This document shows positions 6,757 to 9,870 of a stretch of DNA of 64,000 nucleotides, in pieces. The stretch is from Anthoceros angustus (Eukaryota; Plantae; Anthocerotophyta): positions 124,001 to 188,000 of the forward strand of contig VJWM01000258.1 of assembly GCA_010909165.1 (NCBI GenBank), in the 5' to 3' direction. Made by a program: the position numbers and the translations under genes. Numbering within the stretch: position 1 is the first letter of the stretch; each line of letters opens with the position of its first letter. Below the pieces are notes generated by a model. The model made no database searches. It was not told the origin of the DNA and saw only the letters and a list, made by a program, of their open reading frames with translations.

Positions 6757-9700
6757 ATGGCGGGATTTGAATTAAGTCCGCAGCTGGCGGATCTCGACGG
6801 CCAGCTGACGGACCACTTCCGATTTCTCACGTACGAATCTGCTCTGACCTGAATTTAGTGTGCATGCAGCCACTTTTGGCCACGTAGCCTCTTGAATCTT
6901 GTGTTTTGCTGGATATTGTACTAGAATGCAGTTGATTACGGGGCTGTTCAGCTTAAGTCTCAGCTACATGTTTCTCTCTCAAACCTTGATGAGGAATTTC
7001 TGATACAAGTTTGCATCATTGATGTGTCAGCGCTTGCCTTCATAGAATGGACTGCATCAGTTTTTTTTGGGTCCGTATTTTTGTGGTTCCCTAGGGTTTA
7101 CCCCTTTTCTGTGACATTTGCCAGGACTGGTTTCCAAAAATTGGATAAGATCAAAGATGAGAAGCGACAGAGTAAGCAGCTCGAGGAGCTCACAGCCAAA
7201 ATGCGTGAATGCAAAAGGTATGCTTTTTTGACATCTGGCAGGTCGGATTCCTCGAATTTCGTCCTGGGATGGCCTCTGTACTCGCAGGCTTGAGAGCTTG
7301 GGCTGCCTACTTTCCCGCTAAAGTGCTACTGGTGCTGGATTGTTGTACTCAGGCTCATTAAGGAATTTGATAGAGAGATCAAGGAAGAGGACTCTAAAAA
7401 TACTCCTGAGATGAACAAGCAGCTTAATGAGAAGAAGCAGTCACTTGTGAGTACTGCAGATGGTGTTGCACTTCTTTTATGTCAAGTCTGCTTTGAACGG
7501 TCTCTTCCCTTGTCCCTGCTTTTCTGTAGCATGCATCTATGGTGATCTTTTAATCATACGCTCTTGGTTGCTTGTACAGATCAAAGAGCTCAACTCATTT
7601 GTTGCCCTGAGGAAAACGTACTCTTCTCCCTTATGCCCTGTCTTTTGTTGCCACTGGTCTTATTAATTCAGAATCTTTGGCGGCCCTATCTGAGTCTAGC
7701 AGTGGTCACCCCATCTATGGTGAACTATCTGCCGCGTAGGGCCTAGATGAAAGCTGGCTAGAAGATGATGGTTAGTGATACCTGACTTTCCACCATATAT
7801 GTTAGCGACATTCGGTTAGTGTGACTGTAGTCTTGGACGGCCCTATCTGAGTCTAGCAGTGGTCCCCTTATCCATGGTGGATTATCTGTCGCATGGGGCC
7901 TAGATCAAGGCCTGCCTAGAAGATGATGGTTTGTTTTACCTGACTTTCCTCCATATATGTTAGCAACATTTGGTTCCTGTGACTGTAGTGTTGGACGGCC
8001 CTCTCTGAGTCTAGCAGTGGTCTCCCTATTCACCGTGTATCATTTGCCGCATGGGGCCTGTATCAAGGCCTGCCTAGAGGAAGATTGTTAGTTTTATCTG
8101 ACTTTCCACCATATATGTTAGCAACATTTGGCTCCTGTGATGGTAAGCTTAGACGGCCCTATCTGAGTCTAGCAGTGTTCCCCTTATCTATGGTGGATTT
8201 TCTGCCGCATAGGGCCTATATCAAGGCCTGTTAGAAGATGATGGTTAGTGTTACCTGACTTTCCACCATATACATTGGCTACACATGGTCCATCTGAGTC
8301 CACAGGGGTCCCCTTTTTCTTGTGAACAATCTAGTATTGTTATTGGTACCTGACTTCTCACCAGATACATTGGCTAAACATAGGTTTTGCAAGACTAGTG
8401 AGGCCGTGTATGTGTCTAGCAGAGTCTCCTTATGCATGGTTGATTGCTTCCCGCCTGTAAGGTTTGGAAAACTCTGTTGTCAATTCTTGTCAATTCTTGT
8501 CAATTCTTCTTGTAGCCTAAACTAATTTAGGGCTTTGGTCACTGAGTGGTGTGAGTCATTCCTGACTGTAATATACCAGCTATACTTTACTCTCCATTGT
8601 ACTACGTGGGTGCCGTGCCCGTGGTATGGAGGCTACGAGGGACTGACATGTACTGTTGGCCTTGTCAAAGCTTATGTTCCCGATGACCATGGGATGATGA
8701 GATTATATGCCAGAGATTCTCATGGTCTTATCGGGCTTGGTTGCAGGTATACAAGTACACTGGGAAACAAGAAGGACCAGTTGTTGGAGGGGGGAACGAG
8801 TGGTGAACCTTTGGCTGATCCAAATGTTCGAATGGCTTCGAGTAAGTTGGTCTGCTCCTCCTCTTGGTTGTTTGTGGCGTATCTAGGACTTATCTTTGAC
8901 ACAGTTTGCACGAGGATCATGGTAAGGTGGCTCGCTCATAGATCCTGTTGAATTTGTAGCAATGTCAAATCAGGAATTGATTGATGGTGGGAGAAAGCAG
9001 ATGGATGAGACTGACCAAGCAATTGACCGGGCTAAGAAAGTGAGCAAGTTGTAAGCTGTCGCAAATTCAGTGCATGGTTGGCGCATGTGGGAGAAGCTCA
9101 TCTGAGTCTTTGGGCTTCTCATTTTTTCAGGTTGTTGAGGATACTATCAATGTGGGTGCACAGACGGCAGCGACACTCAAGTCTCAGGTATTTATGGCTT
9201 ACCAGGCATCTGATGCTGAGTTTACTTCCAAAGACCTGGTCCATCTTGATTGCCGATCTACTTGGTTGTGTGGATAGTGAAGTTCTTGCACAGAATTTTA
9301 GCCCCCTCTAATTCACTGTCCGTCTTGACAGACGGAGCAAATGGGAAGGATTGTGAATGAGCTTGATACCATTTCCTTCTCCATAAAGAAGGCCTCACAG
9401 CTTGTGAAGGAGATCGGTAGGCAGGTATATATGCTTTCATAGCTCGGGTCCAGTGCACAAAATCCTCACAGTTGCGAGAATGAGGCAAACAAGGGGAAAC
9501 GTGTTGTGGTGCATGGAGAAATGGCTATAGATTATGGCGGTTGTGCTAATTCTGTTGCAACTGTGGTTACCTTTGAGCAGCTGGCTACCGACAAGTGTAT
9601 TATGCTGTTTCTTTTGCTGATCGTTGCTGGAGTAATCGCCATCATTGTTGTCAAGGTACCCGCGTGCTGTTTGTTGAAGGTTTCTGTGTATTGCATTAGC

Positions 9701-9870
9701 CTTGTTTGTATCGGGGTGTGACCTCATTGTTCGGTATTGCTGATGTGGTGGTTTGGTTGCGATGTCAGATTGTAAATCCCAATAACAAAAACATTCGGTC
9801 ACTTCCGGGTTTGACTCCCCCTGCCAGCAATTCCCGCAAATTATTGTCGGCCTTGCTTGATCTGGAGTGA
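6757..9870 (+). CDS. NPSN: Novel plant SNARE (NPSN11/12/13 family, Qb-SNARE), 10 exons
   Basis: Spliced peptides MAGFELSPQLADLDGQL / GFQKLDKIKDEKRQSKQLEELTAKMRECKR / LIKEFDREIK / IKELNSFVALRK / QMDETDQAIDRAKK / VVEDTINVG / TEQMGRIVNELDTISFSIKKASQLVKEIGRQ / LATDKCIM + TM helix / IVNPNNKNIRSLPGL. Introns are GT-AG. Confidence 0.95.
7682..8286 (+). ncRNA. Candidate tandem array of four box H/ACA snoRNA-like units in NPSN intron 4 (7682-7813, 7839-7971, 7997-8129, 8155-8286), with degenerate copies to ~8465
   Basis: Period is 157-158 bp. Each unit has a GGCCCUAU/RURGGGCC hairpin, then an H box (AGATGA, AGATCA, degenerate GTATCA, ATATCA), a second hairpin (GCUAG/UUAGC base, GUUAG/CUGAC apex), and ACA+3 nt. 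Unit length is ~132 nt. Confidence 0.6.

What the first reader, a model, noticed from the sequence alone, without database searches (positions are those of the whole stretch)
7682..8465. Tandem intronic array of box H/ACA snoRNA-like units in a SNARE (NPSN) gene, with a plausible 18S Psi1181-equivalent guide
Seen in sequence: this is the gene's only ~1.1 kb intron, and it holds four 157-158 bp units plus two decayed ones. Each unit has a 5' hairpin (GGCCCUAU..GCAG/CUGC..RUAGGGCC), an ANANNA H box directly after it (7745, 7902, 8218; degenerate at 8060), a 3' hairpin, and ACA 3 nt from a ~132-nt end (7808, 7966, 8124, 8281). Many differences between copies keep pairing through G-U swaps. Established: this is the canonical H/ACA architecture, with the target U 14-16 nt from the box, and yeast 18S Psi1181 is the first U in the conserved UGCGGC-UU-AAUUUGACUCA. 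Inference: GCCGC(A) starts 14 nt before the H box and can pair with UGCGGC, while UGAGUCuAG can pair with UUUGACUCA, imperfectly next to the upper stem. The array may therefore be an amplified, diverging guide family in an unusual host gene. No target was found for the 3' pocket.
Basis: partly seen in the sequence, partly recalled or inferred. Interest (0 to 1): 0.82.

Follow-up and report, generated by a model that had tools for sequence, protein, structure and literature searches.

The report
Tandem intronic rRNA-guide snoRNA family
An intron of a membrane-traffic gene in a probable hornwort holds four tandem copies of a small guide RNA, missing from Rfam and also found in peat moss, that most likely marks two known ribosomal RNA uridines for modification; it is an ordinary kind of RNA, but I found no plant guide reported for those two sites.

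Summary
Confirmed. Intron 4 (7618-8746, spliced in RNA-like contigs) of an NPSN SNARE gene holds four 157-158 bp units (80-88% alike) and two remnants. Each unit has two hairpins, an H box (broken in unit 3) and ACA. Rfam has no match. The unit is not a satellite. Its 5' hairpin is kept in the same intron of a more distant relative whose other introns have diverged. Whole copies occur in Sphagnum (two, downstream of RPS9) and in a third, probably plant, contig (four or more, tandem), with compensatory stem changes and fixed box spacing. The 5' pocket ranks 18S U1181 (yeast numbering) first of 1354 rRNA uridines, through a widened pocket. New here: the 3' pocket fits the uridine equivalent to human 18S Psi1625 and tomato Psi1567 (6+3 bp, weaker support). 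Human SNORA5 guides this same pair, and both sites are pseudouridylated in tomato. Best reading: a bryophyte H/ACA guide family that works like SNORA5/snR85. Membership of those families, the mature RNA and activity are untested, and hornwort rRNA was replaced by proxies. The scan noted other duplicated H/ACA clusters in this genome, but not this family.

The parts
6757..9870 (+). NPSN-type plant SNARE host gene: 10 coding exons (6757-6830, 7125-7217, 7353-7446, 7580-7617, 8747-8841, 8960-9039, 9131-9187, 9332-9424, 9581-9655, 9769-9870), 801 nt in frame
   Evidence: Splice joints in RNA-like contigs; exon-2 and exon-3 frames hit proteins named 'novel plant SNARE 13'
7618..8746 (+). Host intron 4, 1129 nt, the only long coding-region intron
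   Evidence: Joint 7617>8747 GT..AG in runs X2 and X18; intron-spanning contigs at about 8% of exon depth, while introns 1-3 have none
7682..7813 (+). Unit 1, the most intact H/ACA snoRNA copy
   Evidence: Folds into two hairpins, -44.8 kcal/mol, z -2.3; both pockets and both boxes intact
7691..7700 (+). Unit 1, 5' pocket left arm; UGAGUC pairs with 18S GACUCA (yeast 1188-1193)
   Evidence: GAGTCT is invariant in all family members
7731..7736 (+). Unit 1, 5' pocket right arm GCCGC(G/A); pairs with 18S UGCGGC (1175-1180) and starts 14 nt before the H box
7745..7750 (+). Unit 1 H box, AGAUGA
7761..7766 (+). Unit 1, 3' pocket left arm GAAGAU; pairs with 18S AUCUUC just after the predicted Psi-G (human 1625 equivalent)
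7795..7797 (+). Unit 1, 3' pocket right arm AUA; 13 nt separate its first base from ACA in all nine full copies examined
7808..7810 (+). Unit 1 ACA box
7839..7971 (+). Unit 2: H box 7902, ACA 7966; one C>U wobble in the 5' pocket (C in organisms B and C); weak 3' lower stem
7997..8129 (+). Unit 3, a decaying copy: H box GTATCA at 8060, 3' pocket arm changed, stems damaged; ACA 8124
   Evidence: (116.6 bits against 135-140)
8155..8286 (+). Unit 4: H box 8218, ACA 8281; two compensatory changes in the 3' lower stem
8290..8383 (+). Remnant 5: internally deleted copy with no H box, keeps ACA at 8378
8402..8462 (+). Remnant 6: decayed 5' hairpin only
   Evidence: 12.5 bits

Best explanation
The units are tandem-duplicated genes of one box H/ACA snoRNA family. 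They are transcribed with the NPSN pre-mRNA and cut out and trimmed to about 132-nt RNAs ending at ACA+3 (inferred from how plant intronic clusters are known to be processed). The RNAs bind the CBF5/NOP10/NHP2/GAR1 core (inferred). The 5' pocket guides pseudouridylation of the 18S uridine equal to yeast 1181, human 1238 and tomato 1184 (about 85% likely). It pairs 6 bp on the 5' side of the target and 5-6 bp further downstream, leaving about 4 target bases open instead of 2. The 3' pocket probably guides the uridine equal to human 1625 and tomato 1567 (about 65% likely). The family therefore works like human SNORA5, and like yeast snR85 for the first site. Units 1, 4 and probably 2 are usable, redundant copies; unit 3 and the remnants are decaying. 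Shown here: anatomy, splicing of the host intron, conservation, covariation and complementarity. Inferred: mature RNA, protein binding and catalysis.
For: (1) Conservation in place: the 5' hairpin is 81% identical in the same intron of L001 (z 13.5), close to the exons (83-84%), while introns 1-3 score z 0.9-2.0. (2) Whole-unit homologues occur in Sphagnum and in contig L110, 66-79% identical. (3) Structure: 94% of cells paired and 7 of 27 pairs with two-sided changes; 0-1 of 500 shuffles reach these values and slid controls give 35-46%. (4) ACA is invariant 13 nt after the first 3' pocket base. An H box or its ANANNNA variant lies 14 nt after GCCGC in every full copy except unit 3. (5) U1181 ranks 1 of 1354 and 1 of 1180. 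(6) U1565 came up in a scan run before I knew its significance (rank 4-5 for units 1 and 4), ranks 3 in the fixed-register family scan and lies 14 nt before the m7G site. (7) Tomato LC-MS shows Psi1184 at 100% and Psi1567 at 85-92%, 14 nt before m7G1581, both marked as found in human (PMC9483110). (8) SNORA5C is listed with 18S U1238 and U1625 (PMC10835520). (9) Pockets tolerate up to 6 unpaired target bases and modify the 5'-most U; 8 bp is the minimum (PMC6049503). (10) Intron 4 has its own contigs in RNA-like runs, while introns 1-3 have none.
Against: No Rfam family matches, even at E<=10 on one unit. No raw reads were available, so no RNA ends were seen (one search used contigs only). The target rRNA is a proxy: green-plant rDNA from contaminant contigs L013 and L024, not hornwort. 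The strict two-unpaired-base scan did not return U1181, and the invariant U after GAGUC faces a U in the target. The 3' target drops to rank 59 of 1354 when all registers are allowed, its right arm is only 3 bp, and the Sphagnum 'b' copy has lost the left arm. Units 2 and 3 do not fold better than shuffles. The covariation count uses related sequences, so it is not a probability.
Confidence: 0.8

Rival explanations
1. It is a real H/ACA snoRNA family, but one or both pockets guide other sites. Candidates are the 25S uridine equal to yeast Psi2416 or an snRNA uridine for the 5' pocket, and 18S U151 or no target for the 3' pocket.
For: The 25S site scored 26 for unit 4 in the strict scan and has no assigned guide in Arabidopsis (U2406 'nd'). 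18S U151 is the top hit for the 3' pocket in the register-free scan. snRNAs were not tested.
Against: The 25S site needs 17-nt spacing and a mismatch next to the target, leaves the invariant GAGUC unexplained, and scores zero in the family scans. U151 needs a 5-nt bulge in the guide and the opening of an invariant G-C pair, and it is not among the tomato pseudouridines.
Confidence: 0.13
2. The family is functional elsewhere (Sphagnum, other loci), but this array is mostly a decaying local amplification with at most one active copy, or the structured intron mainly acts in cis to slow splicing of NPSN.
For: Unit 3 and both remnants are broken, and units 2 and 3 fold no better than shuffles. The intron is retained at about 8% of exon depth.
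Against: Unit 1 is intact and unit 4 carries compensatory changes. The array persists in organisms B and C, and the hairpin persists in L001. In Sphagnum the family lies outside NPSN, so it is not tied to this intron.
Confidence: 0.05
3. The array is a satellite, minisatellite or transposon fragment that only resembles an H/ACA RNA.
For: Head-to-tail repeat in which the spacers are duplicated too (64-86% alike); no Rfam hit.
Against: Conserved in the orthologous intron of a distant relative and in mosses at another locus, with box spacing and covariation kept; no other copy in the 64 kb window.
Confidence: 0.02

Closest known systems
Human SNORA5 (ACA5; SNORA5A/B/C)
   Same: Two-hairpin H/ACA guide for 18S U1238 and U1625 (PMC10835520), the same pair predicted here; intronic and multi-copy. 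From memory, not checked: its 5' hairpin takes U1238 and its 3' hairpin U1625, as here.
   Different: No Rfam match at any threshold tried. From memory its 5' pocket pairs right up to the target dinucleotide, whereas this family pairs further downstream (1188-1193) and leaves a wider loop. Different host genes. Common descent is not shown.
Yeast snR85
   Different: No sequence match in Rfam; a single known target; not a tandem intronic array.
Plant intronic and polycistronic snoRNA clusters with paralogous copies
   Same: Several snoRNA copies in one long intron or downstream of a ribosomal protein gene; paralogues and clusters are common in plants (PMC5122169; PMC12218528).
   Different: Here one family is amplified head to tail together with its spacer. 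I found this family in neither Rfam nor the searchable part of these papers' supplements.
Arabidopsis snoR161 and snoR134 (neighbouring 18S U1188 and U1192)
   Same: H/ACA guides for uridines in the same 18S stretch.
   Different: Different target uridines. This family lacks the AAUUAAG-type arm that the 1187-equivalent site would need.

Membership tests
Box H/ACA snoRNA | Hairpin-hinge-hairpin-tail secondary structure | tested here: met
   MFE folds of unit 1 and the moss copies; consensus fold and covariation
Box H/ACA snoRNA | H box (ANANNA) in the hinge | tested here: met
   Units 1, 2, 4 and L110a/c have ANANNA; some Sphagnum copies have the ANANNNA variant; unit 3 is broken
Box H/ACA snoRNA | ACA after the 3' hairpin, three bases from the mature 3' end | tested here: inconclusive
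   ACA is invariant at a fixed place in nine full copies, but the RNA end was not seen because only contigs were available
Box H/ACA snoRNA | Pocket about 14 nt from the box, with two arms complementary to a target around a U | tested here: met
   5' pocket 14 nt, 6 + 5-6 bp with a widened gap; 3' pocket 13 nt, 6+3 bp with the usual two-base gap (about 14 nt rule in PMC5778458)
Box H/ACA snoRNA | Accumulates as a discrete RNA bound to CBF5/NOP10/NHP2/GAR1 and directs pseudouridylation | not testable with these tools
   No raw small-RNA reads, immunoprecipitation or pseudouridine maps for hornworts were available
SNORA5 / snR85 families (Rfam) | Scores against the family covariance model | tested here: not met
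   No hit at the gathering threshold or at E<=10; none for the moss copies at E<=1
SNORA5 / snR85 families (Rfam) | Guides 18S U1238 (yeast 1181) | tested here: met
   By prediction only: rank 1 of 1354
SNORA5 / snR85 families (Rfam) | Second pocket guides 18S U1625 | tested here: inconclusive
   Rank 3 in the fixed register, rank 59 register-free; the site is modified in tomato
SNORA5 / snR85 families (Rfam) | Common descent, shown by homologues that link plants to animals or fungi | not tested
   No algal, vascular-plant or protist homologues were found; no human sequence was fetched or compared
Satellite or transposon-derived repeat | Dispersed or neutrally evolving copies, with no positional or structural conservation | tested here: not met

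The most novel reading that the evidence does not exclude
The widened 5' pocket is kept from hornworts to peat moss. It clamps 18S on both sides of a 7-nt loop (U1181-U1187) and covers the m1acp3-Psi1191 site. It may be a distinct pocket design that modifies more than one uridine in that loop (dual-guide pockets are known, PMC8763049), or that orders the modifications of this P-site region during ribosome assembly. Its repeated tandem amplification would then reflect a need for dosage.
Probability: 0.1. Interest if true: 0.65.

Novelty: new member of a known kind. Interest (0 to 1): 0.42.

Why it matters
Two 18S pseudouridines shared by tomato and human (tomato 1184 and 1567) have no guide in the Arabidopsis compilation I could read (PMC8351944). 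This family is a concrete candidate, and its profile can now be used to look for the flowering-plant counterpart. If the pairing of both targets on one RNA is inherited, the SNORA5 arrangement goes back to the plant-animal ancestor even though sequence models do not detect it. The conserved wide pocket is a natural test case for H/ACA pairing rules. The tandem copies themselves are ordinary plant snoRNA evolution.

Tried and rejected
Rfam on the whole window, a 3-kb region, one unit and the moss loci: no real hit. Strict hornwort pattern in metagenomes: none; the relaxed pattern gave 3 true loci among 120, and the rest looked like chance bacterial matches. 18S pattern in viral contigs: none. 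The exon-5 protein search found nothing, and the exon-3 search gave no further recognisable hornwort contig. Pfam on single exons found nothing, as the pieces are short. NPSN loci of other plants (L002-L004, L092-L095) lack the unit. The supplements of two plant structured-RNA papers hold no matching motif in the files searchable here (200 of 621 files for PMC5122169). Rejected targets: 18S Psi1187 and Psi1191 equivalents (arms absent), 25S Psi2416 equivalent, 18S U151. Two papers (Chlamydomonas snoRNAs; the original ACA5 description) were not held. The large protein search was not needed and not used. snRNA targets were left out because no tool-derived plant snRNA sequence was available.

Full report
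Observation. The array is real: period 158, 3.8 copies at 7677-8272, 84% matches. Unit motifs occur only here in the window, far above chance. Units start at 7682, 7839, 7997 and 8155 and are 80-88% alike. Two remnants follow, at about 8290-8383 and 8402-8462.

Host. Contigs of two RNA-like runs show all nine predicted coding-region introns spliced, including 7618-8746 (1129 nt); the others are 91-294 nt. The exons add up to 801 nt in frame. Exon-2 and exon-3 frames hit proteins named novel plant SNARE. The joined protein was not built; exons were searched apart by reference. Earlier scan notes call this genome a probable hornwort, which I did not test directly. In both RNA-like runs intron 4 has contigs of its own at about 8% of exon depth, while introns 1-3 have none. 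This shows retained or stable intron RNA but cannot show mature ends. The array is also present, in several copies, in DNA of two related organisms, on contigs about 90-95% identical to the window.

Conservation. L001 is a Logan contig of a more distant relative (exons 83-84% identical). It carries the 5' hairpin in the same intron at 81% identity (z 13.5), while introns 1-3 are near background (z 0.9-2.0); the contig ends at the hairpin. A relaxed pattern built from the pockets and H box found whole units in three metagenome contigs. L149 and L190 are Sphagnum: a neighbouring protein clusters with S. fallax and S. troendelagicum proteins, and both genomes carry the same two copies about 0.5 and 1.1 kb downstream of the RPS9 stop codon. 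L110, of unknown but probably plant origin, has at least four tandem copies. NPSN loci of other plants lack the unit. In a tree the four window units form one group apart from the other copies (100/100, midpoint root only, L001 left out). Amplification therefore happened separately in different lineages and the host locus has changed.

Structure. The consensus has two hairpins, each with an internal loop. With the pockets left open, 94% of cells pair and 7 of 27 pairs change on both sides; shuffles and slid controls do not reach this (the sequences are related, so this is not a probability). GAGUCU, CAG and UG.CGC are invariant. GCCGC starts 14 nt before the H box, and AU(A/G) starts 13 nt before an invariant ACA, in all nine full copies; about 14 nt is the known ruler (PMC5778458). 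Unit 1 folds best (z -2.3), unit 4 moderately, and units 2 and 3 no better than shuffles. Unit 3 has lost its H box and part of the 3' pocket. Rfam finds nothing.

Targets. Hornwort rRNA was not available, so I used green-plant rDNA from contaminant contigs, delimited by Rfam. The 1181 region is invariant among them, and the 1565 region has a non-angiosperm form and an angiosperm form. For the 5' pocket, GCCGC(A/G) pairs with 18S 1175-1180 and (U)GAGUC with 1188-1193. U1181 ranks first of 1354 uridines with fixed arms and with free registers. A strict scan allowing only two unpaired bases misses it, because about four target bases stay open. Yeast experiments show that pockets accept up to six unpaired bases and modify the 5'-most U (PMC6049503). 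For the 3' pocket, the strict scan returned 18S U1565 among the top five for units 1 and 4 before I knew what it was. GAAGAU and AUA flank the U-G dinucleotide with 6+3 bp. It lies 14 nt before the m7G site, as tomato Psi1567 does before m7G1581 and human 1625 before 1639. It ranks 3 with fixed arms but 59 with free registers, and one Sphagnum copy has lost the arm, so this target is less sure. Tomato LC-MS shows both sites modified, Psi1184 at 100% and Psi1567 at 85-92% (PMC9483110). Human SNORA5C is listed with exactly U1238 and U1625 (PMC10835520). An Arabidopsis compilation lists neither site nor a guide for them (PMC8351944). That two separately derived predictions land on the target pair of one known snoRNA is the strongest argument for the 3' assignment.

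Mechanism. Shown: anatomy, host splicing, conservation, covariation and complementarity. Inferred from known H/ACA biology: release from the intron, trimming to about 132 nt, assembly with the CBF5 core and isomerisation of the two uridines. Confidence is about 0.95 that this is an H/ACA family, 0.85 for the 5' target, 0.65 for the 3' target and about 0.5 for descent from the same ancestor as SNORA5.

Comparison and novelty. It works like SNORA5 (both sites) and snR85 (first site), but it fails the Rfam membership test, so I do not file it in those families. Paralogous, clustered and mobile snoRNAs are normal in plants and other eukaryotes (PMC5122169; PMC3511168), and the scan has unverified notes of other duplicated H/ACA clusters in this genome. 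My literature searches found no description of this family, but coverage is incomplete and an unassigned Arabidopsis snoRNA could be its counterpart. Verdict: a new member of a known kind, interest 0.42.

Noticed in passing
L149:1005-1060 (Sphagnum, just upstream of the first family copy): A stretch with TGATGA that may be a box C/D snoRNA in the same cluster downstream of RPS9; Rfam gave no hit.
   Followed up: no
L149:1713-1849, L216:4485-4621: The second Sphagnum copy keeps the 5' pocket but has lost the GAAGAU arm of the 3' pocket in every Sphagnum locus fetched, a possible subfunctionalisation.
   Followed up: partly
L110:2070-2713: An independent tandem array of at least four family copies (one decayed, one cut by the contig end), with no host gene on the contig; organism unknown.
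   Followed up: partly
window:7618-8746: Intron 4 has its own contigs in both RNA-like runs, at about 8% of exon depth, while introns 1-3 have none; slow splicing or a stable intron RNA.
   Followed up: partly
window:8477-8508: A 10-bp unit repeated 3.2 times in the same intron, after the array.
   Followed up: no
window:6626-6677: A GGGGTT-type run upstream of the NPSN start codon, G-quadruplex-like.
   Followed up: no
window:31084-38109: A 2341-aa uninterrupted ORF that resembles UTP20, a ribosome biogenesis factor (by eye only).
   Followed up: no
window:19865-23383: Duplicated myo-inositol-phosphate-synthase-like coding pieces; already noted by the scan.
   Followed up: no
L005-L091: Dozens of bacterial and archaeal genome assemblies carry eukaryotic (mostly plant) rDNA contigs as contamination.
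   Followed up: partly
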